This document shows positions 5,002 through 32,528 of a stretch of 64,000 nucleotides of DNA, one piece after another. The notes beneath the pieces are model-generated. The model saw only the letters and a program-made list of their open reading frames with translations. It was not told where the DNA came from and did no database searches. Position 1 is the stretch's first letter; every line of letters begins with the position of its first letter. Location: positions 1 through 64,000 of IMG/VR virus record IMGVR_UViG_3300014494_000005; one strand, given 5' to 3'. The translations under genes and the position numbers were made by a program.

Positions 5002-5515
5002 CTAAAATTGCCATTTGAATATATTCATCATCAACATTATATTCATAACATTCTTTATTGGCAATCATAATAACAACACCTTTTTTACAATGTTTTAATA
5101 TTCGTTTTAAATTGGCAAAATTATCATTATTTTGCCAAAATTTTGTTATAATACTAAGTAAATGATGTGGTTTATTAACACTGATGATTGGTGATTTTTT
5201 ATCTACATATCCACCAAGCATTGGTATCATTACATCATATCGTGGATTTATAATATCTGTTTCAATATCATATTGAAATATGGGAGTAAATACAAATCTG
5301 ATTTTATTAATTGATACACGATTTTCTGATAAAATATTTCTGTTTTTAATAATTAATTTTTTTTCATAATCCGATAATACATATGAACCAATAGAATATT
5401 TTTTATAAATTCTTTTATTAATAATTGAAGTGATTATTTTTTTAATTCTACCATAGAAAAAAATAAAAACACTTATTAGTAATAACGCAATTATTATTAA
5501 ATAAATTATTAACAT
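4952..5515 (-). CDS. Hypothetical protein with N-terminal TM anchor
   Basis: Hydrophobic N-terminus. Confidence 0.6.
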   Translation of the reverse strand: MLIIYLIIIALLLISVFIFFYGRIKKIITSIINKRIYKKYSIGSYVLSDYEKKLIIKNRNILSENRVSINKIRFVFTPIFQYDIETDIINPRYDVMIPMLGGYVDKKSPIISVNKPHHLLSIITKFWQNNDNFANLKRILKHCKKGVVIMIANKECYEYNVDDEYIQMAILDDEIEKYNQNNENYGN

Positions 5516-6066
5516 TTCTCTTCAATTAGTTTTTTAAACCATTCATAACTTTCATTTGATTTATCACCTGTTGCATTATCACAACGATAAAATTTTATAT
5601 AAAGGTCTAAACAATCAAGTAAATTTAAATCACCAATAAGTTTTTCAGCACGTCTTTTTGCCTTATACCAATCGCCATGTCTTCCACCTTGTGACCATGC
5701 ATTATATGCTTCATCATGTGATTGAATAACTTGAAGTATTTTAGTATTATTGCAATATTTTTCAGCAAATATTTCGGCAATTTTACCATGATGATTATCA
5801 CCCACTTTTGGTTTTGTATTGTCAACTTTATGTTTAAAAGTATCGTGAACTATTGCAATTAAACGTAAATCCTGACGGTCTTCATCATCAGCATAAAATT
5901 TATCAATGTTTTCTAATACTTCTTTAATATGATAAATAACCTGACCTTCTGGATGTCCACTTCTTGGGCGACCATGATTTGCACCTTGAATAAAAACAGC
6001 ATCAGAGATTATTGCAATCTCGATGCCGTTTTCAGGTTTCACGATATTTTTAATTAATTCGTTCAT
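5509..6066 (-). CDS. HD-domain phosphohydrolase
   Basis: GHPEG..YHIKEV, IAIVHDTFKH, late D (RCDN). Confidence 0.75.
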   Translation of the reverse strand: MNELIKNIVKPENGIEIAIISDAVFIQGANHGRPRSGHPEGQVIYHIKEVLENIDKFYADDEDRQDLRLIAIVHDTFKHKVDNTKPKVGDNHHGKIAEIFAEKYCNNTKILQVIQSHDEAYNAWSQGGRHGDWYKAKRRAEKLIGDLNLLDCLDLYIKFYRCDNATGDKSNESYEWFKKLIEEKC

Positions 6067-6216: not shown

Positions 6217-6483
6217 TTACATTATTCTAAAATTTGTCACATATATTAATTTATTATTATTACTATAGATACCATCAACAAGAATAAATTTTTCATATCT
6301 TGTTTTAGATGAAACAACAGTTTTTTCTAACATTTCAAATAAAACAGAACCTTCAAATGCTTTTAATTTATGCTTATGTTTTTCATTTTCTGCAATATAT
6401 GAATAATATGTTTTTTTTATTCTTACTTTTGGTGTTGCTTTTCTAATTATTTTCCATATTATTTTGAGAGTTTCCGATTTCAT
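6217..6483 (-). CDS. Hypothetical protein
   Basis: 88-aa ORF. Confidence 0.5.
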   Translation of the reverse strand: MKSETLKIIWKIIRKATPKVRIKKTYYSYIAENEKHKHKLKAFEGSVLFEMLEKTVVSSKTRYEKFILVDGIYSNNNKLIYVTNFRIM

Positions 6484-6967
6484 TTTTTTCTTGTTTTACT
6501 TGTTTCCGTACTTCCATTAACGCTTTGCCTAAAAGATTCATACCTTGCCATTTAGTTTCATCAAGCACATCATCATTACTCCAATGCAATCCAATTCCCC
6601 ATACAGAATCATTTGGATTTGTTTCAACCAATATTTTATCACTAGTTGATAATAGTAATTCTTTTGAGCGTTTATCTTGACTAAATTTAGCATAATTAAC
6701 AGCTACCATTATATCAAAACAAGCAATCATCCATTTTTCAGTATTAAAATTTTTAACCATACGACCCAATGCTTTATTTTCTCTTGGTTCTGGTGTTTCA
6801 ACTATTTTTTTTGCTGTTTCCATATCACCAAAGAAAACAGCTTTTTCCCACATGAATGCTTGTTCTGTGTTAAAAAAAGTAATTCCTTTATATTTAAATT
6901 GACATATATGCCAATTTGATATTCTGGACTTATAAAAAAATACGTATTTATCCGTTATTCGTTCCAT
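6443..6967 (-). CDS. NADAR (YbiA/DUF1768) family ADP-ribosylglycohydrolase-like protein
   Basis: FFNTEQAFMWEKA, KALGRMVKNF, AKFSQ, LVETNPNDSVWGIG, GMNLLGKALMEVR. Confidence 0.9.
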   Translation of the reverse strand: MERITDKYVFFYKSRISNWHICQFKYKGITFFNTEQAFMWEKAVFFGDMETAKKIVETPEPRENKALGRMVKNFNTEKWMIACFDIMVAVNYAKFSQDKRSKELLLSTSDKILVETNPNDSVWGIGLHWSNDDVLDETKWQGMNLLGKALMEVRKQVKQEKNEIGNSQNNMENN

Positions 6968-7555: not shown

Positions 7556-7708
7556 ATGAAAGCAAATAAAGAAATGTATTCATTAAGAATACCGTCAGAA
7601 CAACTGAAGTATTTACGTGATACTGCAAAAAATAACTTTACTACAGTTACACAATTAATTTTGGACTTAGTAAATCAAAAAATGAAAAGTGATATAAAAT
7701 ATGAATAA
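7556..7708 (+). CDS. Small ribbon-helix-helix-like DNA-binding protein (copy 1)
   Basis: 50 aa: beta-like MYSLRIP, then two helices (EQLKYLRDTAK, TVTQLILDLV); paralog at 12141. Confidence 0.65.
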   Translation: MKANKEMYSLRIPSEQLKYLRDTAKNNFTTVTQLILDLVNQKMKSDIKYE

Positions 7709-8534
7709 AATATGTGGAATTTATAAAATAACGTCACCATCGGGTAAAATTTATATCGGGCAATCGAGAAATATAAAACGAAGATTGAATGATTATATTA
7801 ATAATAGATGTTATGAACAATTATTAATATATCGTTCAATTAATAAATATGGTTGGAATATGCATAAATTTGAGGTAATTCATGAATGCACAGAACCAGA
7901 ATTAAATTATTTGGAAAAATATTATATAAAGTTTTACGATACATTTGATACAAAACATGGAATGAATTTAACAAGTGGTGGTGACCACATAAAACTTTCA
8001 AAAGAATCATTACGAAAAATTAGTGATAGTTCTAAGAATAGAATTGTTTCACAAGAAACTAGAGATAAATTTAGTAAAATTCATAAATGGAAAAAAATAT
8101 CTAAAGAACATAAATCAAGTTTAAGAAAATTTCATTTAGGTAAAAAACACACTAAAGAAAGTATTGAAAAGATGAGAATAATAAAATTAAATAAAAAACC
8201 ATCTAATGAAACAAAAGAAAAACTAAGAATTGTTAATACAGGAAAAAAACGTTCAGACATAACAAAAGAAAAAATAAGAAAATCAAAATTAGGAAATAAA
8301 ATATGGCTAGGTAAAAAACATTCTGAAGAAACCAAACAAAAATTAAGTGAAATTCATAAGAATAATTATGAAATTTATAACCAAAATAATGAATTGGTTC
8401 ATAAATTCAGAAATACCATTAGATTGGAATTAAAGAAATTAAATTTACCTCGTGAACGTTTTTGTGAAACATATAGAAGAAATGAAAAAATAAAAAATGG
8501 TAAATATAAGGATTGGTATATTATCAAACTATAA
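7701..8534 (+). CDS. GIY-YIG homing endonuclease with NUMOD3 repeats
   Basis: CGIYKITSPSGKIYIGQS, R and E catalytic positions, repeated GKKHS/TEETK.KL. Confidence 0.92.
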   Translation: MNKICGIYKITSPSGKIYIGQSRNIKRRLNDYINNRCYEQLLIYRSINKYGWNMHKFEVIHECTEPELNYLEKYYIKFYDTFDTKHGMNLTSGGDHIKLSKESLRKISDSSKNRIVSQETRDKFSKIHKWKKISKEHKSSLRKFHLGKKHTKESIEKMRIIKLNKKPSNETKEKLRIVNTGKKRSDITKEKIRKSKLGNKIWLGKKHSEETKQKLSEIHKNNYEIYNQNNELVHKFRNTIRLELKKLNLPRERFCETYRRNEKIKNGKYKDWYIIKL

Positions 8535-10860: not shown

Positions 10861-11454
10861 TCATTTTATATAATTACTTTGATAAAATTCGATTGCTTTT
10901 TTTATTGTTTCATTATGATTAAATGCCCAATTAAGTTTTTTATCATATTTACAATAAAAATCTGAAATTGATATCCATTGAGCTAATTTTGTTTCATTAT
11001 TTGAATAATTTTCAACATAAATTGGAAGTCTTTCAAGATGTTCATGAAAATCATATACTGAAAGATATATAAATGAAACATTTTGGCGATGATTGCCCGG
11101 ATTATCTCTGATTTCTATAGGTTTTTCATTATTATTTGTGATTAGTAAGTCATTATAATCTGGAAGATATAAACTGGTTTCTTCATATACTTCTCTTATC
11201 ATTGATTCAAAAATATTTTCATTAAAGTCAACATAACCATACGGTAAGCAATATTTATTTTTTTCATCACGCATTTTATTTGACCTTTGGGTAATAAGTA
11301 CATGCATTCCACCAACTAATGGAATAATTAATACAACTCCAACTGTTGCAATAGACCTACTTATCCAATAATCAAGATTTATAATACCTTGATTTGATTT
11401 ATGTTTAATTATTAGATGTTCATTAGGAACATTATTAAATATAGGCTTATTCAT
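10861..11454 (-). CDS. Nudix hydrolase
   Basis: Nudix box GYVDFNENIFESMIREVYEETSL. Confidence 0.85.
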   Translation of the reverse strand: MNKPIFNNVPNEHLIIKHKSNQGIINLDYWISRSIATVGVVLIIPLVGGMHVLITQRSNKMRDEKNKYCLPYGYVDFNENIFESMIREVYEETSLYLPDYNDLLITNNNEKPIEIRDNPGNHRQNVSFIYLSVYDFHEHLERLPIYVENYSNNETKLAQWISISDFYCKYDKKLNWAFNHNETIKKAIEFYQSNYIK

Positions 11455-15945: not shown

Positions 15946-17871
15946 TTACAATTTTTTTAAATTTAAAAAATGTTGAACTTTTTCATCATATGAATAAATT
16001 AATTTATCATTAATTTCTTTTTGTATTAAATTTAATCCATTTTCATTACATAATTGTAAAAAATTGACAATTGAAATATCATTATTATCAATACAATGTT
16101 TTACAATTATTTTATATAAAGTAATGTGTTTATTTAATAAATCTCTTGCTCTTTTCTTTTCTTCACCTAATATATTTTCAATAATATCATTAGTTTTTTC
16201 AACATCATAATTTGATTCGTAATATGTATCTACTTCTTTTTTTAATATATTAGAAATAGTTCCATCCATAGCATAATGTCTAACATATCTTGCTGCAATA
16301 TCTGTTGCATTTATAATATCAGCAAATGCACCAGTAGATTTAAATTCCTCACCAAAAACCATTTCTTCGGCAATAAAACCAGCTAATAATATTGCTATTT
16401 GATTTCTTAAAAATGTTCTATTATCAATTGATTCATGTTCGATAATAAAACCTTTACTAAAACCAGCAGCATTGATATTTATTTGTTTTGGCGGTGTATC
16501 AAATAGTAAACAATAAAGTATAGCATGTCCAATTTCATGTATAATATATAATATTCTTTCATCAACAGATTTATTTTTATGAATATTGTCAATTTCTAAA
16601 ACAATTTCTTTTTCATATATTTTTTTATTAATATTTACAAATAAATTATTATTTTCATATTCAATATATAACTCATTAACGTTTTCACAAAAAGCATTAT
16701 ATATAAAATACGGTAAATTACTTCCAAGTATATTAAATACTGTTGAAATTGCTGGTCTTACACCTTGTGTTGGAAAAACACCATTTCTATATATTATATC
16801 ATATATATCATTAGATAATTTAATATCTATATTATGCTCATTTTTTACTTTATCAAGAATTTTTTGACAATTCATTTTAATGATTGTATAATATGATTTT
16901 TTATCTAAACATGGATATATTACATGATTATTTCCAAAACGAGCAATTTGTTCTGGTTTAAATTGATGTGATAATGCTTGTTTAATATTAATAATATTAA
17001 CTCTTTTTGATAATTCATGATATACATCAGCATCAGTATCGCTATCATCAACTTCATCCGACATTTTGAATGCACTATCTAAGTTTCCAGAAATAAAAAT
17101 TAAAAGTTTTTCATATGATTTACCTTCATTAATATTATCAGCTTTTAAACTATTTTGAACCAGAAATATTCTTTCTTCTGCATCCATTTCCATTATTTCT
17201 TCAATAGTATTATTTAAATTAAGAGTTTTCTTTATTCTACTTGCTGTCCAATGTGAGGTTTTAAATCTACGTTTTTTTAAAACTTTAATTTTATTAGATT
17301 GTTCATCTTTTTTTGATTCAATATCTTTTGGTTCTTCCTCATTATCTCTTGCATCAAGCCAATACATTTCATCAAAAAGCATTTCCATAATTTGAACTTT
17401 ACGTTCAGAATTATTTTGAAACCTACCATCTGAAAGTAATGTCCAAACATCATTAAAATACTTGTTTTCAAGCATTTTTCCGTTTTCATCTAAAGTACGA
17501 TAACGTTGAATTTCATCGAGTAATAATACTGCAGGTTCTTTTGTATCAATACCACCACTTTCTAAAAAACTTTCAATGTTTTTCATGTAATCGTTTTTCA
17601 TATCCATTTGAATTTCAATGAACTTATCAGTAAATTTTAATAAGCTCACAAGAGTTCTAACTAAATCAGTTTTACCAACACCAGTTATACCCCATAATGA
17701 AATTATAAGTGGTCTGAATTGAATATTTGGCATTAAATACCAGAGGGAAATATAATCGATTATTTTGTCAATAACATTATCGATTCCAATAAATTTTTCT
17801 TTTAATTTTATTTTAATTTCTTCGAGTTTTTCTCTTTTCTCTTTGATTTGATTAAAAAAATCTTTATTCAT
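15946..17871 (-). CDS. AAA+ ATPase fused to an FtsH/M41-like zinc peptidase
   Basis: Walker A GITGVGKT, Walker B LLLDE, FKPEQIARFG, HEIGH zinc motif, LAGFIAEE...GA..DI..AT; no TM segment. Confidence 0.8.
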   Translation of the reverse strand: MNKDFFNQIKEKREKLEEIKIKLKEKFIGIDNVIDKIIDYISLWYLMPNIQFRPLIISLWGITGVGKTDLVRTLVSLLKFTDKFIEIQMDMKNDYMKNIESFLESGGIDTKEPAVLLLDEIQRYRTLDENGKMLENKYFNDVWTLLSDGRFQNNSERKVQIMEMLFDEMYWLDARDNEEEPKDIESKKDEQSNKIKVLKKRRFKTSHWTASRIKKTLNLNNTIEEIMEMDAEERIFLVQNSLKADNINEGKSYEKLLIFISGNLDSAFKMSDEVDDSDTDADVYHELSKRVNIINIKQALSHQFKPEQIARFGNNHVIYPCLDKKSYYTIIKMNCQKILDKVKNEHNIDIKLSNDIYDIIYRNGVFPTQGVRPAISTVFNILGSNLPYFIYNAFCENVNELYIEYENNNLFVNINKKIYEKEIVLEIDNIHKNKSVDERILYIIHEIGHAILYCLLFDTPPKQININAAGFSKGFIIEHESIDNRTFLRNQIAILLAGFIAEEMVFGEEFKSTGAFADIINATDIAARYVRHYAMDGTISNILKKEVDTYYESNYDVEKTNDIIENILGEEKKRARDLLNKHITLYKIIVKHCIDNNDISIVNFLQLCNENGLNLIQKEINDKLIYSYDEKVQHFLNLKKL

Positions 17872-17941
17872 ATATATAATATTTTTAATTGTCAAATATA
17901 AACATTATAAAAATAATAAACAATTAAAAAATATTATTATT

Positions 17942-25149: not shown

Positions 25150-25902
25150 TCATTTTTCTTTTTGAATATATTCTTGAAAACATTGATAAAACATATTTGG
25201 TAATATGGCATGGTTTACAAAACCATAAAGTCCGCAGGAGAAGAATGTGTGAATTTCGATTATGAAAGTACCATCTTTATCATTAACACCAACATCCAAT
25301 GTATATGCAATTGGTGCTGATTTATATTTCTTAATCATACTTCTAATTTTATTTATATTAGGAAATTTAGTAAATTCACCACAATAATTTTGCAACCCAA
25401 CTAATTTATTTTGATATACAAAAGCACGCCATTCACTATCAATATTAATATATTTAGAAATTTGATAATTACCTTCAGGTAATGGTTTAAATTCTTTATT
25501 TGTATTAATAATAGCTGAATATCCTTTTATTTTGTCATTACTTTTAACAAAATATTCACCGTCAAAACCATCTAATGATGATTGATTACCATTAAAAATA
25601 ATTCTTTCTGTATAACAAAATAATTCTTCTGGAACATTTATTGGCTTTGGAGTAAGATTGTAAAAATGTTGCAAAAATGCTGTTACAAATTCTACACTAC
25701 CTATGGGTACATATGTAAAATGCATTGGTTTAAATATTGAAGGGTCAATAGTTTCTACATTACAATCAGTATTAAGAAATTTGACTTTAATATTATCTTT
25801 TTCTAAATGAAGTAACCAATTCTTGAATCTAATTGATTCAAGTAGAGTAAATGAGAAATCGTGAGTAACATTTCCGTTACATTTTTGAATAAGAAATTTC
25901 AT
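25150..25902 (-). CDS. ATP-grasp domain protein (DUF4343/R2K-like)
   Basis: PIGSVEFV, YFVKS, SEWRAFV, YTLDVGV, IIEIH..FSCGLYG. Confidence 0.7.
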   Translation of the reverse strand: MKFLIQKCNGNVTHDFSFTLLESIRFKNWLLHLEKDNIKVKFLNTDCNVETIDPSIFKPMHFTYVPIGSVEFVTAFLQHFYNLTPKPINVPEELFCYTERIIFNGNQSSLDGFDGEYFVKSNDKIKGYSAIINTNKEFKPLPEGNYQISKYINIDSEWRAFVYQNKLVGLQNYCGEFTKFPNINKIRSMIKKYKSAPIAYTLDVGVNDKDGTFIIEIHTFFSCGLYGFVNHAILPNMFYQCFQEYIQKEK

Positions 25903-25907
25903 TATTT

Positions 25908-26219
25908 TTATTTTTTAGGTGCATAATTTTTATCAAGCCAATATACTATAGGTGCAAGGTCTTCATCATCATGATACATATCTTTCACATATTCTTTGCG
26001 AGTTTCTATCCATTCATCGATTCCATACCACCAACCTTCTGGTAAGAATTTTTCTGCTGCAGCAACTGCTTCAAATTTATTTTTAAAAATAAATGTTTCT
26101 TCACACATTAATATAGTAATACCTATTGGTTTAAAACCAGCATCACAAATTTCTTTTAATAGTTCACTATTTGGAGTACCATAAGAACCATGTCCTAAGT
26201 ATGTTGAATGTGGTGACAT
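25908..26219 (-). CDS. Hypothetical protein
   Basis: 103-aa ORF. Confidence 0.6.
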   Translation of the reverse strand: MSPHSTYLGHGSYGTPNSELLKEICDAGFKPIGITILMCEETFIFKNKFEAVAAAEKFLPEGWWYGIDEWIETRKEYVKDMYHDDEDLAPIVYWLDKNYAPKK

Positions 26220-26262
26220 TTTTTATTTTAAATTATTGCCAAATATATAAAATAAATTCGAA

Positions 26263-27420
26263 TTAATCAATACCTTTATCAGAATAACTTGAAAATTGTT
26301 TGGGAATACCAATGCATGAACCAATTGCTGTTGCATCTACAGTAATTAATTTACCACCACCAATACCAGTAACTGGAACTTTATCTGGAACTTGGTCAAG
26401 ACAAGTAACTACAACATTTTTTCGAGATTTTGGATTATTATAATTGTCACAATCAAATGCATATCTTAATAATCCAATATCAAGTATTGATTTTCTGAAT
26501 ACACCTTGCCATCCATCATTTACGTTGGTTTCTAATGGATTATCCTTAATATAACTAATGTCCATGCCTTCATTTGTCATCGGACCATTTCCATGACGAG
26601 TCTGATATGCACGTGTTATATAGTATGTATCGACATTTCTTTCATTAATTGTAATTCCAAGTTTGTTTATGATTTCAATTGCATTTTTGCTTGTTGTATT
26701 GCTTCGTGTAACATGTGGAAAAAATCCATAATCCATATCAAGCATGATGCCTTGACCACCTTCAAAAATTAAGTCAAAATAATCAGTAGGTATTGATGAA
26801 CCAAGTAAGTATATATCATATATTGTATTTACAATATCAAATCTACTTACAAGGTCATCACATGCTAATTTAAAATCATCAATTATTTTTTGAGTTTTGG
26901 AATTGGCAAGACTAATATATTCATAATATTTTTCTTGTAAAAGTTTGAGTTTAATATCACGAATTTTTGGATATTGTAAATCTCTGGCATATAAATGAAA
27001 AAAATCTTCATTTCTTTTAATTGTTGTACCAAAACCAACGCCAACAGTACCATGAAGATTAAGACTATCAAGTTTAATATTTTTCAAAATATCAAAAGGT
27101 GTTGTTATCATTGCATTTGCATTAATAAATAATTGAGGATGAATTTCCATTTTTCTCAATGCATTGCCTTCTTTTAGTATTCCCACAGGATTTACAGTAC
27201 AATATTCTGACCAATATGTTGGTGCGCCTAATAGTGTACCCGAACCAAAATTTGAGAATACATGTCTTTTATCATCAATAACTACTGTATGTCCGCATTG
27301 ATGCCCGCCATTGAATCTTATAACTAATGGATTATTGGATTTACTACAAAGATAATTTACAAATGCACCCTTGCCTTCATCTCCAAACAAAAATCCTAAA
27401 CAAATTGATATTGAATTCAT
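26263..27420 (-). CDS. purA: Adenylosuccinate synthetase-like protein
   Basis: GFLFGDEGKG, RFNGGHQCGHTV, GTVGVGFG, FEGGQGIMLD..YG.FPHVTRSNT, RAYQTRHGNGP. Confidence 0.85.
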   Translation of the reverse strand: MNSISICLGFLFGDEGKGAFVNYLCSKSNNPLVIRFNGGHQCGHTVVIDDKRHVFSNFGSGTLLGAPTYWSEYCTVNPVGILKEGNALRKMEIHPQLFINANAMITTPFDILKNIKLDSLNLHGTVGVGFGTTIKRNEDFFHLYARDLQYPKIRDIKLKLLQEKYYEYISLANSKTQKIIDDFKLACDDLVSRFDIVNTIYDIYLLGSSIPTDYFDLIFEGGQGIMLDMDYGFFPHVTRSNTTSKNAIEIINKLGITINERNVDTYYITRAYQTRHGNGPMTNEGMDISYIKDNPLETNVNDGWQGVFRKSILDIGLLRYAFDCDNYNNPKSRKNVVVTCLDQVPDKVPVTGIGGGKLITVDATAIGSCIGIPKQFSSYSDKGID

Positions 27421-27439
27421 TATGATTAATTATTATGTT

Positions 27440-27820
27440 TTACTTTATTCTTACAACCCAACAATAACCAAACATTAAAGGACATGGATTGACTATTTCA
27501 TCATCTGATTCATCCATAACATTCATAAATTCAGAATAATCTTTTTCCCATACAGACCCCGGAATTTGATTTTGCATTCTTTTTATTTGAACATCAGCTT
27601 CTTCAATTTTCCATTGTCCTATTTCCTTAGAAATTATAGTATATAATGTTTTTATTTCACGAAAAGATATCAAGGTATTTAATGGAGCAATTCTTGTTAA
27701 AAAAAATGTTTTTATTTGAGACTTCAAATCATGTCCTTCAGAAAAGTCTTGTTCGATATTTACTTTAACTTCTGTTCCAGAATTTGGAGAAACATATGTA
27801 CATTCGAATTTTCTTAACAT
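27440..27820 (-). CDS. Hypothetical protein
   Basis: 126-aa ORF. Confidence 0.6.
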   Translation of the reverse strand: MLRKFECTYVSPNSGTEVKVNIEQDFSEGHDLKSQIKTFFLTRIAPLNTLISFREIKTLYTIISKEIGQWKIEEADVQIKRMQNQIPGSVWEKDYSEFMNVMDESDDEIVNPCPLMFGYCWVVRIK

Positions 27821-27837
27821 AATAATATTTTTTACAA

Positions 27838-27868
27838 TAATACGAAAAACAATTTATATTGTTACAAA
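27838..27868 (-). promoter_or_regulatory. TTTGTAAC-N16-CGTATTA motif
   Basis: Spacer AATATAAATTGTTTTT = 16 nt. Confidence 0.6.
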
Positions 27869-27898
27869 AAAAGGGATATATTTTAATATATCCCTTTT
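27869..27898. terminator. Intrinsic terminator downstream of the vWA gene
   Basis: AAAAGGGATATATT-TT-AATATATCCCTTTT perfect hairpin with A/T tracts on both sides. Confidence 0.75.
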
Positions 27899-27916
27899 GT
27901 TTCATTTATATTTTTA

Positions 27917-28831
27917 TTAAAGTTTTAATGCTCCTTCATCACTTGTTGATACGACAGCACCACTTACAACTGTTGCAAGAGCAGTAGTAACCAAACCAGC
28001 AGTTTTTTCATCAAATTTGCTTACAACTGATTTAATATCAGCACCATGCTGAACTGCGATAAGTGTTGCAATTGTAGCACAAATTGCATGATAATCGTCC
28101 AAAATGATAAGTCTTTCACCAAGCATTTTTTTCCAATAGCCAAGAACATCTGGGTCATTTTTGTAACTAGCTTCATTAACGTGTATATGATATACATTAT
28201 AAAGTCTTTGTGCTTCTGCAAGAAGTTGTTCATCAGTATATTCTTCATTTTCTTTATATCCAAGAATATTTTTTAAAGTACTTGCATCAACAAAATCCCA
28301 ACTTTTTTCATCACCAATTGTAAAAAGAAAACCCTTTTCATTACGTTTTTCAAAACAATCAATACTGGTATGTTTACCAGCAATTAACCATGCAAGTAAA
28401 TAACTTTCCATGTCTTGACCACCACCACCACCTTGAATAGCTACGTTTTTTAACCATTTATCAAGGTCTTCAGTACTTGATTCAAATTGACCTATCTGAA
28501 TTGGAGTACTGATGCAATGGTGGTCATTAATTGCACCAAAAAGTACTTGTGGATGTTCTACGCCATTATCAATAATAGTATTCATAAGAGTATCGAGTTC
28601 ATTTTTGATAATATCTTCAGGAATTCTACCCATACTACCAGTATCATCAAGAAAAATCATTATTGCTAAAGATTTTGGATGTTCATCACTGTCACGAGAT
28701 TCTCTAACTGTAATATTTTTTGGAAGCATATCATTTATTGCAGATTTTGAAAAAATATCATCTGCACTTTTACTTGCATAACTTGCACTTATGTGCGTAT
28801 ATGCATCATGTGACCATTTACCACCACCCAT
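27917..28831 (-). CDS. von Willebrand factor A (vWA) domain protein
   Basis: MGGGKWS N-terminus, IFLDDTGSMG MIDAS-like motif, GGGGGQDMESY, FTIGDE. Confidence 0.8.
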   Translation of the reverse strand: MGGGKWSHDAYTHISASYASKSADDIFSKSAINDMLPKNITVRESRDSDEHPKSLAIMIFLDDTGSMGRIPEDIIKNELDTLMNTIIDNGVEHPQVLFGAINDHHCISTPIQIGQFESSTEDLDKWLKNVAIQGGGGGQDMESYLLAWLIAGKHTSIDCFEKRNEKGFLFTIGDEKSWDFVDASTLKNILGYKENEEYTDEQLLAEAQRLYNVYHIHVNEASYKNDPDVLGYWKKMLGERLIILDDYHAICATIATLIAVQHGADIKSVVSKFDEKTAGLVTTALATVVSGAVVSTSDEGALKL

Positions 28832-28833
28832 AA

Positions 28834-29028
28834 TTATTTAGTTTTAGTTGTTTCGTCATTGCATTCACAGTTTTCATCTGTACATTCGCAAGGTTTATCA
28901 CCTGTTTCTGTTACAGGTTCTGTGGTATCAGCAACTTTAGTTGCTTCTTCTGCAGTTTTTACTTCTGCATTTTCTTGTTCTTGTGCCATATCTTCGAAAG
29001 ACTTGGCATCATTTGTATTAAATCCCAT
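28834..29028 (-). CDS. Small acidic protein
   Basis: 64 aa, E/T-rich, three Cys. Confidence 0.55.
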   Translation of the reverse strand: MGFNTNDAKSFEDMAQEQENAEVKTAEEATKVADTTEPVTETGDKPCECTDENCECNDETTKTK

Positions 29029-29099
29029 AATTTAAAATTTTAATTGTTAATACTATTTAATTTAAATAAAACTCATTATATTTATATAAAAAAATTAAG

Positions 29100-29987
29100 T
29101 TACAAATTTAATAAATAAAATTTCTTTTCAAAATTTTTTGCCAATATTTCTCTATATTGTTTATATTCATCAACATGATTTTTATGTTTTGTTAACAAAA
29201 ATGTTAAGATATTTTGATTTACATTAACTTTATCCATTTTTAATTTAGTACCTGCTGCTGACTTATCTCCTAACAAATATAATGCAATTTTTTTACAAAG
29301 CTCCAAATCTATATCAGGAGTTGCTATTTTTTCTGAAAAAAGAGTGGTAGGATACCACATTTTATACTTTGCCGAAATTGTTTCAGCTTTCTTAAATAAT
29401 GTGGTCATATGATAGAAACTAATTATTATAATTCCATGAGTTTCAGGCACTACAAAGACTGTTGTAGGATTTAATCCCATATGAGAATAGCTAATTTGCC
29501 TTAACCATAGCACAAACTCGAACATTCTACTAAACAACCAATTAACATGAATTTGTTTTAATTTCTGTCCAGTAAGAGGAACACTACGGTTTTTTAAATT
29601 TATAGTAAGTTTATTTTTTTCTAAGACCATACTTTCTGGCAGATATCTATGAAAACTTTCTGACGCTTTGTCAGTTTTTGCCATAAGTTGTTTATAATTA
29701 TTTACTGATTTCGTAATTAATTTTCTATTAGCATCAGTTACAATATATTCGATTTTTTTTTCAAATACTCTAAAATCACCGCTTTCATCAGTAAATTTTG
29801 TACCATTTTCCAGAATATCTTTATAATTATTCATTTTCGCCATTGCTTCTGCTGCTAATGAATTTGGATGATAATCTGGATGAATGAGTTTACAATAATC
29901 CCTATACAATTTTTTCCAATCATCTGGGAATATATCTGATGGTTTATTTGATTTAATTAGTTTATCAATTAATTCACGGTCTGTCAT
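29100..29987 (-). CDS. J-domain-like (HPD) protein fused to a degenerate kinase-like domain
   Basis: YRDYCKLIHPDY...AMAKMN; SHMGLNPTTVFVVPETHGIIII catalytic-loop-like segment lacks Asp/Asn. Confidence 0.6.
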   Translation of the reverse strand: MTDRELIDKLIKSNKPSDIFPDDWKKLYRDYCKLIHPDYHPNSLAAEAMAKMNNYKDILENGTKFTDESGDFRVFEKKIEYIVTDANRKLITKSVNNYKQLMAKTDKASESFHRYLPESMVLEKNKLTINLKNRSVPLTGQKLKQIHVNWLFSRMFEFVLWLRQISYSHMGLNPTTVFVVPETHGIIIISFYHMTTLFKKAETISAKYKMWYPTTLFSEKIATPDIDLELCKKIALYLLGDKSAAGTKLKMDKVNVNQNILTFLLTKHKNHVDEYKQYREILAKNFEKKFYLLNL

Positions 29988-31303: not shown

Positions 31304-31425
31304 CTTTTAAATATTTTTTGACAAATGTAAATAAAAAAATTAATAATACTATAATAATATTTATTTTTTATAAAAATTATAGTAAAAAAAATTTTTTATT
31401 TAAATTATTTCATTATTTTTGCATC

Positions 31426-31986
31426 ATGATAAATTTAGAAAAAATAAAAGAATTTGCGCAAAAATCTTATGATGATGCTAATTGTAAATATAATGATGGA
31501 AATTATTTTATTCATATTAATATGGTTGTCGATACATTAAATAATCATATGAATATATTTTGTAATCATAATGATTTTATTAATACTCTTGCAGCATGCT
31601 ACACACATGATTTGTTGGAAGATGCAAAAAAATCATATAATGATATCAAAATAATATCAAATAAAGATGTTGTAGACATTACATTAGCAGTTACTGATGT
31701 TCCAGCAGAAAATCGTTTGATGCGACATTTACTTACTATGGGTAAAACTGTAAGAGATTATCGTGCAATAATTCTTAAAATGTGTGATATGCTTGCTAAT
31801 GCTCAATATAGTAAAGAACATAATAGCTCAATGTATAAAAAATATGTTGAAGAATACGAATATCGCAAACCAATTTTTAAAAAAGCATTAACTTGGTATA
31901 AAGATAATCTCGATATGGATGAAGTTGAAAAACTTTGGGTAATATTGGATTATATTCACAATAATAAAAATATAAATAATTTATGA
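31426..31986 (+). CDS. HD_4 (Mesh1/SpoT-like) hydrolase
   Basis: YFIHINMV, ACYTHDLLED, V.DITLAVTD, ILKMCDMLAN; ATG 31426 preferred over the ORF-track start. Confidence 0.75.
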   Translation: MINLEKIKEFAQKSYDDANCKYNDGNYFIHINMVVDTLNNHMNIFCNHNDFINTLAACYTHDLLEDAKKSYNDIKIISNKDVVDITLAVTDVPAENRLMRHLLTMGKTVRDYRAIILKMCDMLANAQYSKEHNSSMYKKYVEEYEYRKPIFKKALTWYKDNLDMDEVEKLWVILDYIHNNKNINNL

Positions 31987-32528
31987 AAAATTTAGGACAT
32001 CTTATGCTTGACCTTGAAACAATGGGTAATAAAAGCAATGCAGTAATTGTTTCAATTGGTGCTGTTGAATTTGACCTTGAAACAGGTGAATTAGGTAAAG
32101 AATTTTATGAAAGAATTGATTTACAATCATGTCTTGATGTTGGCTTAATAGTTAATGGTAGTACACTTTACTGGTGGTTACAACAAAGTGAAGCAGCAAG
32201 AAATGAAATTTGTAAAAAAGGTAATGACCTCAGAAGTGCATTAGTTTTGTTCAATACTTTTATGATATTTGAAAATGATTTTAAAGATATTCAAATTTGG
32301 GGAAATGGTGCAAGATTTGATATTGGTATATTGGAGGATGCATATACTGCACTTAAATTAGGTACTCCTTGGAATTTTAGAAATGAAAGAGATGTACGTA
32401 CATTAGTTTCATTTGCTCCACAAGTTAAAGAACATTATCCTATAAGTGGTATGGTGCATTATGCGTTAGATGATTGTAAAAACCAAATTGGTTATTGTTG
32501 TGCTATTTGGCAGAAATTAAATAAATAA
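31983..32528 (+). CDS. DEDDh 3'-5' exo(ribo)nuclease (phage/Rv2179c-like)
   Basis: MLDLETMG, WGNGARFDIGIL, HYALDDC..Q. Confidence 0.88.
   Translation: MKNLGHLMLDLETMGNKSNAVIVSIGAVEFDLETGELGKEFYERIDLQSCLDVGLIVNGSTLYWWLQQSEAARNEICKKGNDLRSALVLFNTFMIFENDFKDIQIWGNGARFDIGILEDAYTALKLGTPWNFRNERDVRTLVSFAPQVKEHYPISGMVHYALDDCKNQIGYCCAIWQKLNK

What the first reader, a model, noticed from the sequence alone, without database searches (positions are those of the whole stretch)
25150..29987. J-domain pseudokinase - acidic peptide - vWA - PurA-like - ATP-grasp cluster
Co-directional genes encode an HPD J-domain fused to a kinase-like domain with a degenerate catalytic loop (HMGLNPTT), a 64-aa acidic Cys peptide, a vWA protein with an intact MIDAS-like DxTGS, an adenylosuccinate-synthetase homolog, and an R2K-type ATP-grasp. 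The PurA homolog is short and lacks the usual long C-terminal GTP-binding stretch. None of this is standard phage replication machinery. The chaperone-recruiting, scaffolding and amide-ligase activities suggest an uncharacterised protein- or nucleotide-modification or conflict system rather than plain AMP synthesis.
Basis: partly seen in the sequence, partly recalled or inferred. Interest (0 to 1): 0.6.

Follow-up and report, generated by a model that had tools for sequence, protein, structure and literature searches.

The report
Phage vWA–PurA-like–J-pseudokinase module
A peat-soil jumbo phage carries a three-gene module (a chaperone-recruiting dead kinase, a metal-site vWA protein and a rebuilt adenylosuccinate-synthetase paralog) that also occurs as an unstudied operon in many bacteria, often under an ADP-ribose-sensing regulator, so it is probably a new nucleotide-handling system tied to NAD/ADP-ribose conflicts rather than ordinary AMP synthesis.

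Summary
Only three of the genes form a conserved unit: the J-domain pseudokinase, the vWA protein and the PurA-like enzyme.

- **Conservation.** In 76 of 76 bacterial loci with enough sequence, a vWA homolog is followed directly by a PurA-like gene. These loci come from Bacteroidota, Actinomycetota, Chloroflexota and others. The upstream partner is a J-pseudokinase (25 loci, all with HPD) or a small coiled-coil protein (45 loci).
- **Phage carriage.** The pair or triad recurs in Mycobacterium cluster C, Rhizobium and Vibrio phages. One further jumbo-phage contig has an intein at the catalytic His.
- **The enzyme.** Host genomes keep a canonical purA as well. The paralog keeps the phosphoryl-transfer residues (P-loop, Asp13, His41, Gln224). 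It has clade-specific replacements in the aspartate loop and the IMP 5'-phosphate site. It is neither PurA nor PurZ.
- **Bacterial context.** The operon often follows NrtR. In Flavobacteriia it sits among Nampt, PRPP-synthetase-like, NADAR, Macro, ARH, PARG, SIR2 and Tpt1 genes.
- **Neighbours.** The R2K ATP-grasp, the acidic peptide and two small ORFs are lineage-specific.

I found no description of this module in the literature. The chemistry is inferred, not shown.

The parts
29100..29987 (-). J-domain (HPD) fused to a protein-kinase-fold pseudokinase, 295 aa. One of the alternative third partners of the core pair.
   Evidence: HPD is near-invariant in 83 homologs. The catalytic loop reads HxG[IL]NPxS, with no Asp or Asn. 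DFG is replaced by SFY. No conserved beta3 Lys or Gly-rich loop is seen. AF2 pLDDT is 97.5 and Foldseek returns protein kinases and pseudokinases. The gene is homologous to mycobacteriophage Gizmo gp267 (profile E 1e-42). A homolog lies directly upstream of vWA in most of 25 bacterial loci, all with HPD.
28834..29028 (-). 64-aa acidic, probably disordered peptide. A lineage-specific accessory gene.
   Evidence: A small ORF at the same position in 13 related jumbo-phage contigs shares an N-terminal MG..SFEEMA motif and an acidic E/T/P-rich tail. Cys clusters occur only in the window and in L008. No family hit was found. It is not found in the bacterial loci.
27917..28831 (-). vWA-fold protein with a complete MIDAS-like motif set. 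Core gene.
   Evidence: AF2 pLDDT 82.7; Foldseek returns integrin I-domains and NorD. Residues invariant over 41 phage and bacterial homologs are M1 G2, RESRDSxxHP, DxTGSM, PLQxGQFE, GG, E142, Y144, T155, D158 and GDE. At least 585 bacterial homologs were found.
27869..27898 (.). 13-bp-stem palindromic hairpin between vWA and orf126. A possible terminator or processing site.
   Evidence: Terminator-like scan. No functional evidence.
27440..27820 (-). orf126, a strain-specific insertion between vWA and the PurA-like gene.
   Evidence: Found only in the four 100%-identical contigs, not in the 18 diverged relatives. No significant family hit (one chance-level NCBIfam match, E 0.007).
26263..27420 (-). 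Divergent adenylosuccinate-synthetase paralog (PurA-like), 385 aa. Core gene.
   Evidence: Pfam PF00709 1.2e-40. NCBIfam PurA scores 120 bits against a 402 cut-off and PurZ scores 31 against 300. P-loop, Asp13, His41, Gln224, Thr239 and Arg272 are invariant. The clade-specific changes are N38Q, T129C/V, loss of R143, V273H, a rebuilt Asp loop and K331C. It follows vWA in 76 of 80 bacterial loci.
25908..26219 (-). orf103, a small gene of unknown function that is variably present.
   Evidence: Homologs at 59-71% identity occur in 4 of the 18 related contigs. No family hit.
25150..25902 (-). R2K-clade ATP-grasp. A syntenic neighbour, not part of the conserved module.
   Evidence: Pfam R2K_2 8e-18 and R2K_3 2e-14. 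It is adjacent to the PurA-like gene in all jumbo-clade relatives. It is absent from the bacterial loci. Its phage homologs are in genomes without the pair.

Best explanation
The core of the finding is an old, mobile two-gene unit. A MIDAS-bearing vWA protein is followed by a divergent adenylosuccinate-synthetase paralog. Here, and in many bacteria, the unit is headed by a J-domain pseudokinase.

**Shown**
- The unit exists and is conserved across bacterial phyla and at least four phage lineages.
- It is carried in addition to a normal purA.
- In many bacteria it lies next to the ADP-ribose-responsive regulator NrtR and to NAD/ADP-ribose genes.

**Inferred**
- The paralog still binds GTP and phosphorylates the 6-oxo group of a purine nucleotide, because the P-loop, Asp13, His41 and Gln224 are intact.
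- It then hands the activated carbon to an amine other than free L-aspartate.
- Its nucleotide substrate is probably not a plain 5'-monophosphate, because the aspartate loop and the 5'-phosphate contacts are replaced by clade-invariant residues.
- The vWA protein binds a partner or ligand through its metal site.
- The J-domain recruits host DnaK to that complex. The dead kinase domain acts as a scaffold or sensor.
- In bacteria the operon would be switched on when ADP-ribose accumulates, that is after NAD+ cleavage or ADP-ribosylation.
- In the phage it would be expressed during infection, to keep or repair the adenine-nucleotide/NAD pool, or a nucleotide-modified target, under NAD- or nucleotide-directed host immunity.

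The R2K ATP-grasp, the acidic peptide, orf126 and orf103 are lineage-specific neighbours.
For: **Conserved adjacency**
- All 18 diverged jumbo-phage contigs that reach the genes keep them in the same order.
- Gizmo has gp267-gp268-gp270. RHph_Y65 and phiKT1024 have the vWA/PurA-like pair.
- L029 has the triad with an intein between His41 and Thr42.
- 76 of 80 bacterial loci have the pair; the other 4 are cut by a contig end.
- The vWA/PurA-like gap is 6 bp or less, or an overlap, in about half of the loci.
- Upstream partner: J-pseudokinase in 25 loci, coiled-coil protein in 45.
- In the phage database, the 219 records with a vWA hit show almost the same host breakdown as the 238 with a PurA-like hit.

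**Paralogy**
- 5 of 5 host genomes also have a canonical PurA, at 550-606 bits against 140-176 for the paralog.
- A quick tree splits PurA plus PurZ from the paralog clade.

**Active site**

**NAD/ADP-ribose link**
- The cluster holds NrtR, PRPP-synthetase-like, NADAR, Macro, DUF4291, Tpt1, ARH, Nampt, PARG and SIR2 genes.
- NrtR is also adjacent in 8 actinomycete loci, in Saccharibacteria and in Mucilaginibacter.
- NADAR lies next to the pair in phiKT1024 and is encoded in this window.

**Other**
- Metatranscriptome contigs from 4 peat runs match all genes exactly. This is weak evidence, because DNA carry-over is not excluded.
Against: - No biochemical data exist, and the substrate inference rests on alignment to E. 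coli PurA only.
- Asp333 and Ser414 equivalents and most IMP base contacts are kept, so IMP plus aspartate chemistry with an altered loop cannot be excluded.
- This phage, and the four other phages tested, lack Nampt. This phage also lacks NMNAT and PRPP synthetase. The NAD link therefore comes mostly from bacterial neighbourhoods, and those are dominated by Flavobacteriia.
- Many bacterial loci (Saprospiraceae, Hymenobacter, Dyadobacter, Chloroflexota) have unrelated housekeeping neighbours.
- GIY-YIG endonucleases split vWA from the PurA-like gene in five phage relatives, so tight coupling is not obligatory.
- The complex prediction gave no verdict.
Confidence: 0.4

Rival explanations
1. Ordinary auxiliary metabolic gene. 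The PurA-like protein is a working adenylosuccinate synthetase that boosts AMP supply for phage replication. The vWA and J-domain genes are unrelated neighbours.
For: The Pfam AdSS match is strong. Catalytic Asp13, His41 and Gln224, the P-loop and Asp333 are kept. Phages often carry nucleotide-metabolism genes.
Against: The enzyme always sits next to vWA across phyla. Bacterial carriers already have a canonical PurA. The aspartate loop (T300, T301, R303) and the 5'-phosphate contacts (T129, R143) are replaced by clade-invariant residues. It scores far below the NCBIfam PurA cut-off. The phage has no PurB.
Confidence: 0.15
2. PurZ-type enzyme that makes 2-aminoadenine (Z) DNA, as the PHROG and RefSeq label '2-aminooxy adenylosuccinate synthetase' implies.
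For: phrog_1211 carries that label. RefSeq copies it onto the Gizmo and RHph_Y65 homologs. Two HD-domain proteins are encoded in the window.
Against: Asp13 is kept in 79 of 79 clade members, whereas phage PurZ and PurZ0 have Ser there (PMC12884076). NCBIfam PurZ scores 31 bits against a 300 cut-off. PDB PurZ chains were not among the matches. The tree places phiVC8 PurZ with canonical PurA, away from this clade. The HD proteins hit the HD and HD_4 families, with no hit to the YfbR-like family of DatZ.
Confidence: 0.03
3. An immune or abortive-infection effector system. ADP-ribose release during infection de-represses the operon, and the paralog makes a toxic or antiviral nucleotide or drains GTP/IMP. 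Phages carry it to exclude competitors.
For: Distribution is patchy: about 3% of 300 Bacteroidota and about 0.3% of 300 Actinomycetota genomes. The tree suggests horizontal transfer. The module lies next to NrtR among the ADP-ribose-processing genes that Iyer et al. 2022 read as conflict systems (PMC9503650). The third partner varies.
Against: No PADLOC match. The module is kept with high conservation in at least four lytic phage lineages, and one copy is invaded by an intein at the active site, as is typical of genes important to the phage itself. No nuclease or membrane effector is attached.
Confidence: 0.17
4. J-pseudokinase, acidic peptide, vWA, PurA-like and R2K ATP-grasp act together in one modification pathway.
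For: The order is conserved throughout the jumbo-phage clade. The acidic peptide is kept in position.
Against: That synteny extends to the DNA ligase and HAD genes as well, so it reflects shared descent. R2K and the peptide are missing from every bacterial and other phage occurrence.
Confidence: 0.1

Closest known systems
Adenylosuccinate synthetase PurA (E. coli type)
   Same: Same fold family. P-loop GDEGKG, Asp13, His41, Gln224, Thr239, Arg272 and Asp333 are kept.
   Different: N38Q, T129C/V, R143 lost, V273H and K331C. The aspartate loop TTGRxRR is replaced by N-x-[YWF]-Q-[GK]-x-[LF]-R. The C-terminal half is shorter. The gene is always paired with a vWA gene and is present beside a canonical purA.
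PurZ / PurZ0 of Z-DNA phages (PMC12884076; PMC8342488)
   Same: A phage-borne AdSS paralog with changed substrate use.
   Different: PurZ has Ser at position 13 and keeps a TT..RR-like loop. This clade keeps Asp13 and rebuilds the loop. No DatZ, MazZ or DpoZ partners were seen. It forms a separate clade.
ARG-centred, Nudix/WYL-regulated systems with vWA 'chaperones' predicted to counter ADP-ribosylation (Iyer et al. 2022, PMC9503650, section 3.8)
   Same: The bacterial relatives share the Nudix-wHTH regulator, ARH, Macro, NADAR, a calcineurin-like phosphoesterase and a vWA protein in one neighbourhood.
   Different: That paper does not mention an AdSS paralog or a J-domain kinase. The phage copy has no ARH or regulator. 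Many bacterial copies stand alone.
TerY-P triad (vWA + Ser/Thr kinase + PP2C phosphatase); from my own knowledge of Anantharaman et al. 2012 and Gao et al. 2020, not re-read here
   Same: A vWA protein is encoded with a kinase-fold protein in a three-gene unit.
   Different: There is no phosphatase. The kinase lacks its catalytic residues and carries a J-domain. The third gene is an AdSS paralog. No PADLOC hit.
Phage NAD+ reconstitution pathways NARP1/2/3 (abstract of PMC13464706)
   Same: Phage-carried metabolic counter-measures. The bacterial relatives sit beside Nampt and a PRPP-synthetase-like gene, which I take to be NARP1-like components (own knowledge).
   Different: None of the NARP enzymes is in this phage. 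The module's chemistry is different and unknown.

Membership tests
Adenylosuccinate synthetase (PurA) | P-loop GDEGKG with catalytic Asp13, and the GH(T) motif with His41 | tested here: met
   G12, D13, G15, K16, G17 and H41 are invariant in 79 of 79 clade members, the window included.
Adenylosuccinate synthetase (PurA) | L-aspartate loop (Gly298, Thr300, Thr301, Arg303) | tested here: not met
   The positions are replaced by N, [YWF] and Q, with a gap at Arg303. The replacement is conserved clade-wide.
Adenylosuccinate synthetase (PurA) | IMP 5'-phosphate contacts Asn38, Thr129, Arg143 and Thr239 | tested here: not met
   Q (77 of 79), C/V, and P or other residues replace the first three. Only Thr239 is kept.
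Adenylosuccinate synthetase (PurA) | Score above the NCBIfam equivalog cut-off | tested here: not met
   119.7 bits against 402 (NF002223) and 103.8 against 395 (TIGR00184).
Adenylosuccinate synthetase (PurA) | Makes adenylosuccinate; complements purA | not testable with these tools
   Needs an enzyme assay or genetics.
PurZ / PurZ0 | Ser in place of Asp13 | tested here: not met
   Asp in the window and in all 79 relatives. phiVC8 PurZ has Ser. The criterion is taken from PMC12884076.
PurZ / PurZ0 | Score above the NCBIfam PurZ cut-off; partner genes DatZ, MazZ or DutZ | tested here: not met
   31.5 bits against 300. The window's HD proteins hit HD and HD_4 only. Partner genes were not searched for exhaustively.
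vWA domain with MIDAS | Rossmann-like vWA fold | tested here: met
   The AF2 model (pLDDT 82.7) matches integrin I-domains and NorD at E about 1e-5 and TM up to 0.6 by target. There is no Pfam hit.
vWA domain with MIDAS | DxSxS ... T ... D metal-site motifs | tested here: met
   D62-x-T64-G-S66, T155 and the GDE at 173-175 are invariant in 41 homologs. Metal binding itself was not tested.
J-domain (Hsp40 co-chaperone) | HPD tripeptide between helices II and III | tested here: met
   H36, P37 and D38 occur in 82, 78 and 82 of 83 homologs. The model has helices at 24-35 and 45-61. All 25 bacterial homologs have HPD. The Pfam DnaJ score is below the cut-off.
J-domain (Hsp40 co-chaperone) | Stimulates the DnaK ATPase | not testable with these tools
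   The phage has no Hsp70 of its own, so the host DnaK would be the partner.
Active protein kinase | HRD Asp, catalytic-loop Asn, DFG Asp, beta3 Lys | tested here: not met
   The loop is HxG[IL]NPx[ST] and DFG is replaced by [SGT]-F-Y. No conserved Lys or Gly-rich loop is seen. The fold itself is met. An atypical catalytic activity, as in SelO or SidJ (own knowledge), is not excluded.
R2K ATP-grasp | Pfam R2K_2 / R2K_3 above the cut-off | tested here: met
   65.1 bits against 26.2 and 54.7 against 26.3.
Known anti-phage defence systems (PADLOC 2.0) | Any component model matched | tested here: not met
   0 hits for all seven proteins.

The most novel reading that the evidence does not exclude
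The paralog may not be a free-metabolite enzyme at all. It may be a GTP-driven purine-C6 transferase that works on a macromolecular or dinucleotide substrate. One candidate is joining an activated 6-oxopurine nucleotide to a protein amine, such as the invariant N-terminal Gly of its vWA partner. Another is re-aminating hypoxanthine in a 5'-substituted nucleotide such as IDP-ribose or deamino-NAD. The vWA and J-domain/DnaK pair would present the substrate. That would be a new kind of nucleotide-protein or nucleotide-repair chemistry, induced by ADP-ribose in bacteria and borrowed by phages.
Probability: 0.1. Interest if true: 0.9.

Novelty: new variant of a known kind. Interest (0 to 1): 0.72.

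Why it matters
AdSS paralogs have already yielded one surprise: PurZ, which rewrites phage DNA. This second clade is much more widespread. At least 585 bacterial vWA homologs were detected and the listing limit was reached. About two thirds of the 481 phage AdSS homologs counted in PMC12884076 fall outside the PurZ group and are not discussed further in the passages I read.

The clade has a rebuilt substrate site. Wherever enough sequence was available it sits next to a vWA gene, and in at least three phyla it sits next to an ADP-ribose sensor. Working it out could reveal new purine chemistry. It could also add a component to NAD/ADP-ribose-centred phage-host conflict.

It would also correct current database labels. 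Cluster C mycobacteriophage and Rhizobium phage genes are named '2-aminooxy adenylosuccinate synthetase' and 'serine/threonine kinase'. The first label does not fit a protein that keeps Asp13. The second needs re-checking: Gizmo gp267 lacks the catalytic-loop Asp but keeps the loop Asn and a DFG-like Asp.

Tractable models exist: Flavobacterium johnsoniae, and Bxz1-like phages on Mycobacterium smegmatis.

Tried and rejected
- **Complex prediction.** Complex prediction on PurA-like plus vWA gave no verdict (score 0.01). I do not use it either way.
- **vWA sequence searches.** Pfam, a PDB profile and NCBIfam all came back empty for vWA. Only the fold search worked.
- **Atlas search.** It gave a weak VWA_4 lead at 0.83.
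- **PADLOC.** No hits.
- **DNA search.** Megablast of 14 kb against cultured phages found nothing.
- **J-pseudokinase in other phages.** The profile finds no copy in the Rhizobium and Vibrio phage genomes. Those carry a different Met-rich protein upstream of vWA.
- **Coiled-coil partner.** The bacterial coiled-coil protein has no phage homolog.
- **NAD and purine genes in this phage.** Nampt, NMNAT, PRPP synthetase, PurB and Hsp70 were not found. Nampt is also absent from four other carrier phages.
- **Promoter scan.** At chance level, 56 hits against 50 expected.
- **Reads.** Read laying had contigs only, so neither transcript structure nor true expression can be claimed.
- **Literature.** Eight full-text searches found no paper on this module. 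The de Souza and Aravind 2012 paper on NAD pathways could not be fetched.
- **Tree.** The careful search did not finish. One canonical PurA row (L112) was mis-extracted and forms a long branch. Only the quick tree is cited.

Full report
**What is in the window**

The window is the first 64 kb of a 348,923-bp viral record with 26% G+C. Exact copies of the region occur in peat, permafrost and bioreactor metagenomes from 12 studies, 2018-2025.

Between 25150 and 29987, seven ORFs lie head to tail on the minus strand:
- a 295-aa J-domain/kinase-like protein
- a 64-aa acidic peptide
- a 304-aa vWA-like protein
- orf126
- a 385-aa PurA-like protein
- orf103
- a 250-aa R2K ATP-grasp

**Checking the domain calls**

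- The PurA-like and R2K assignments are solid by Pfam (1.2e-40 and 8e-18).
- The J-domain is below Pfam's cut-off. In an alignment of 83 diverse homologs drawn from 727 hits, H36, P37 and D38 are nearly invariant.
- An AlphaFold2 model of this protein is very confident (pLDDT 97.5). It matches protein kinases, and the pseudokinases STK40 and VRK3 rank first.
- The family consensus has no catalytic-loop Asp or Asn, no DFG Asp, no conserved beta3 Lys and no Gly-rich loop. It is a J-domain fused to a pseudokinase.
- The vWA call has no sequence support from Pfam, NCBIfam or a PDB profile. The model (pLDDT 82.7) matches integrin I-domains and NorD. The MIDAS residues (D62, T64, S66, T155, D174) are invariant.

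**Which genes belong together**

Eighteen diverged contigs of the same jumbo-phage clade keep the same order as far as each contig reaches: HD/exonuclease, HAD, J-pseudokinase, small acidic ORF, vWA, PurA-like, R2K, DNA ligase. That is shared descent and says little about function.

The informative cases are distant ones.
- In cluster C mycobacteriophages (Gizmo), gp267 is annotated as a Ser/Thr kinase. It is in fact a J-domain plus kinase-fold protein that matches this family at 1e-42. It is followed by a vWA homolog, a small gene and a PurA-like gene.
- Rhizobium phage RHph_Y65 and Vibrio phage phiKT1024 have the vWA/PurA-like pair without the J-protein.
- Another 341-kb contig has the triad. 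Its PurA-like gene is interrupted by an intein placed exactly between the catalytic His41 and Thr42.
- Among cultured phages, the vWA hits have almost the same host breakdown as the PurA-like hits: Mycobacterium 200 against 201, Rhizobium 10 against 10, Vibrio 6 against 6.

By contrast, R2K homologs occur in Bacillus phage G, S-CRM01 and Erwinia phage AH06, which lack the pair. The acidic peptide is confined to the jumbo clade. Its position, an N-terminal MG..SFEEMA motif and its acidic tail are conserved, but the Cys cluster is not. orf126 is strain-specific, and orf103 is variably present.

**The module is bacterial as well**

A scan of one genome per prokaryotic species found at least 585 vWA homologs. 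In the best 80 loci, a PurA-like gene follows at once in 76. The other four are cut by a contig end. The gap is 6 bp or less, or an overlap, in about half of the loci.

Upstream lies either a J-pseudokinase (25 loci, all with HPD) or a 111-131-aa coiled-coil protein (45 loci).

Carriers include Bacteroidota, Actinomycetota, Chloroflexota, Saccharibacteria, Desulfobacterota, Gammaproteobacteria and Leptospiraceae. Only about 3% of 300 sampled Bacteroidota genomes and about 0.3% of 300 Actinomycetota genomes carry it.

Five of five carrier genomes also hold a canonical purA that scores 550-606 bits, against 140-176 for the paralog.

A quick maximum-likelihood tree separates canonical PurA plus phiVC8 PurZ from the paralogs. 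It puts the window's clade inside a Bacteroidota-dominated group and Gizmo with actinomycete and Chloroflexota sequences. This suggests separate captures by phages from host-like lineages. It is a quick tree, and one mis-extracted outgroup row should be ignored.

**The enzyme**

I aligned 79 clade members to E. coli PurA.

Kept:
- G12, D13, G15, K16, G17, H41, Q224, T239 and R272 are invariant.
- D333 and S414 are mostly kept.

The phosphoryl-transfer half of the site is therefore intact.

Changed, with replacements that are themselves conserved across the clade:
- N38 to Q (77 of 79)
- T129 to C or V
- R143 lost
- V273 to H (79 of 79)
- K331 to C (72 of 79)
- aspartate loop G298/T300/T301/R303 to N, an aromatic residue, Q and a gap

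PurZ differs in the opposite way. It has Ser13 and keeps a TT..RR-like loop (PMC12884076). The protein also fails the NCBIfam cut-offs for both PurA and PurZ.

My inference, from established AdSS mechanism, is that the enzyme still phosphorylates a purine 6-oxo group with GTP. The amine it then uses, and the 5' end of its nucleotide substrate, are not those of PurA.

**Context that hints at the role**

In Flavobacterium and Chryseobacterium the pair sits in a cluster that begins with NrtR (Nudix plus winged helix). The cluster contains a PRPP-synthetase-like gene, NADAR, Macro, DUF4291, Tpt1, a calcineurin-like phosphoesterase, ADP-ribosylglycohydrolase, Nampt, PARG, SIR2 and a 2OG-Fe(II) oxygenase.

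NrtR also lies directly upstream in eight actinomycete loci, in a Saccharibacteria locus and in Mucilaginibacter.

This resembles the Nudix-regulated, ARG-centred systems with vWA 'chaperones' that Iyer et al. 2022 predicted to counter ADP-ribosylation (PMC9503650). That paper does not mention an AdSS paralog or a J-kinase.

In phages the link is weaker.
- phiKT1024 has NADAR three genes upstream, and RHph_Y65 has an NMNAT/Nudix gene nearby.
- This window encodes NADAR, a Nudix protein and RNA-repair genes (Thg1-like, RNA ligase, HAD_SAK) within 25 kb.
- Nampt, NMNAT and PRPP synthetase are absent.
- Many bacterial copies sit among unrelated genes.

**Best reading and its limits**

I take the core to be a vWA/AdSS-paralog machine with a swappable adaptor, here a J-domain pseudokinase that would recruit host DnaK. 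The phage has no Hsp70 of its own.

In bacteria the module would respond to ADP-ribose. In phages it would be used to survive NAD-, nucleotide- or ADP-ribosylation-based immunity.

The existence and conservation of the module are shown. The chemistry, the physical complex and the role in conflict are inferred. The complex prediction gave no verdict. Metatranscriptome contigs match every gene exactly, but they cannot prove transcription.

They are weighed in their own sections.

**Novelty**

Eight literature searches and two Aravind-lab surveys gave no description of an AdSS paralog coupled to vWA. PMC12884076 counts 481 phage AdSS homologs and discusses only the 151 in the PurZ group.

I rate this a new variant of a known enzyme kind, set in an undescribed operon.

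Noticed in passing
window 6443-6967 (-), 5509-6066 (-), 10861-11454 (-); genome 326862-327305 (outside the window): The phage encodes a NADAR domain protein (1.7e-44), an HD protein, a Nudix protein and, far away, a Macro-like protein. These are ADP-ribose-processing functions of the same kinds that flank the module in Flavobacteriia.
   Followed up: partly
In other carriers the module also lies near a polynucleotide kinase (Gizmo), a T4 Rnl1-like ligase (L029) or Tpt1 (bacteria).
   Followed up: partly
L029:8003-10498: The PurA-like gene of a 341-kb contig carries an intein with a LAGLIDADG endonuclease. It is inserted between the catalytic His41 and Thr42 (…QAGH|C…HN|TV…).
   Followed up: yes
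L008, L016, L019, L021, L022, between vWA and PurA-like; window 7701-8534 (+): GIY-YIG homing endonuclease genes are inserted between vWA and PurA-like in five related phages. A GIY-YIG/NUMOD3 gene also lies elsewhere in the window.
   Followed up: partly
L024 (Gizmo gp267, gp270); L025 (RHph_Y65 gp019): Some public annotations look wrong or doubtful. '2-aminooxy adenylosuccinate synthetase' is attached to proteins that keep Asp13. The cluster C 'serine/threonine kinase' is a J-domain protein whose catalytic-loop Asp is replaced (HGAITPDN), although it keeps the loop Asn and a DFG-like Asp.
   Followed up: partly
L025:3939-4730 and L026:4802-5515: The Rhizobium and Vibrio phages have, upstream of vWA, a shared protein with a conserved N-terminal FRKVDGVVWD motif and a Met/Gly-rich tail. 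It may be a third alternative partner of the pair.
   Followed up: no
window 31318-31986 (+) and 31983-32528 (+); L026:7873-8517: An HD_4 phosphohydrolase and an overlapping exonuclease-like gene are conserved upstream of the module in the jumbo clade. A 32%-identical gene annotated as an exonuclease directly follows the PurA-like gene in Vibrio phage phiKT1024.
   Followed up: no
window 15946-17895 (-): A phage-encoded FtsH-like protein (AAA+ plus peptidase M41), 649 aa.
   Followed up: no
window 27917-28831 (-), residues 1-2; window 28834-29028 (-), residues 1-2: The vWA protein starts with an invariant Met-Gly in all 41 phage and bacterial homologs. The acidic peptide and its relatives also start with Met-Gly. 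No explanation has been tested.
   Followed up: partly
window 25150-29987: The stretch is held word for word by 14 DNA runs from peat, permafrost and a bioreactor (12 studies, 2018-2025), and in part by 6 peat metatranscriptomes. The phage is therefore persistent and nearly clonal in these habitats.
   Followed up: partly
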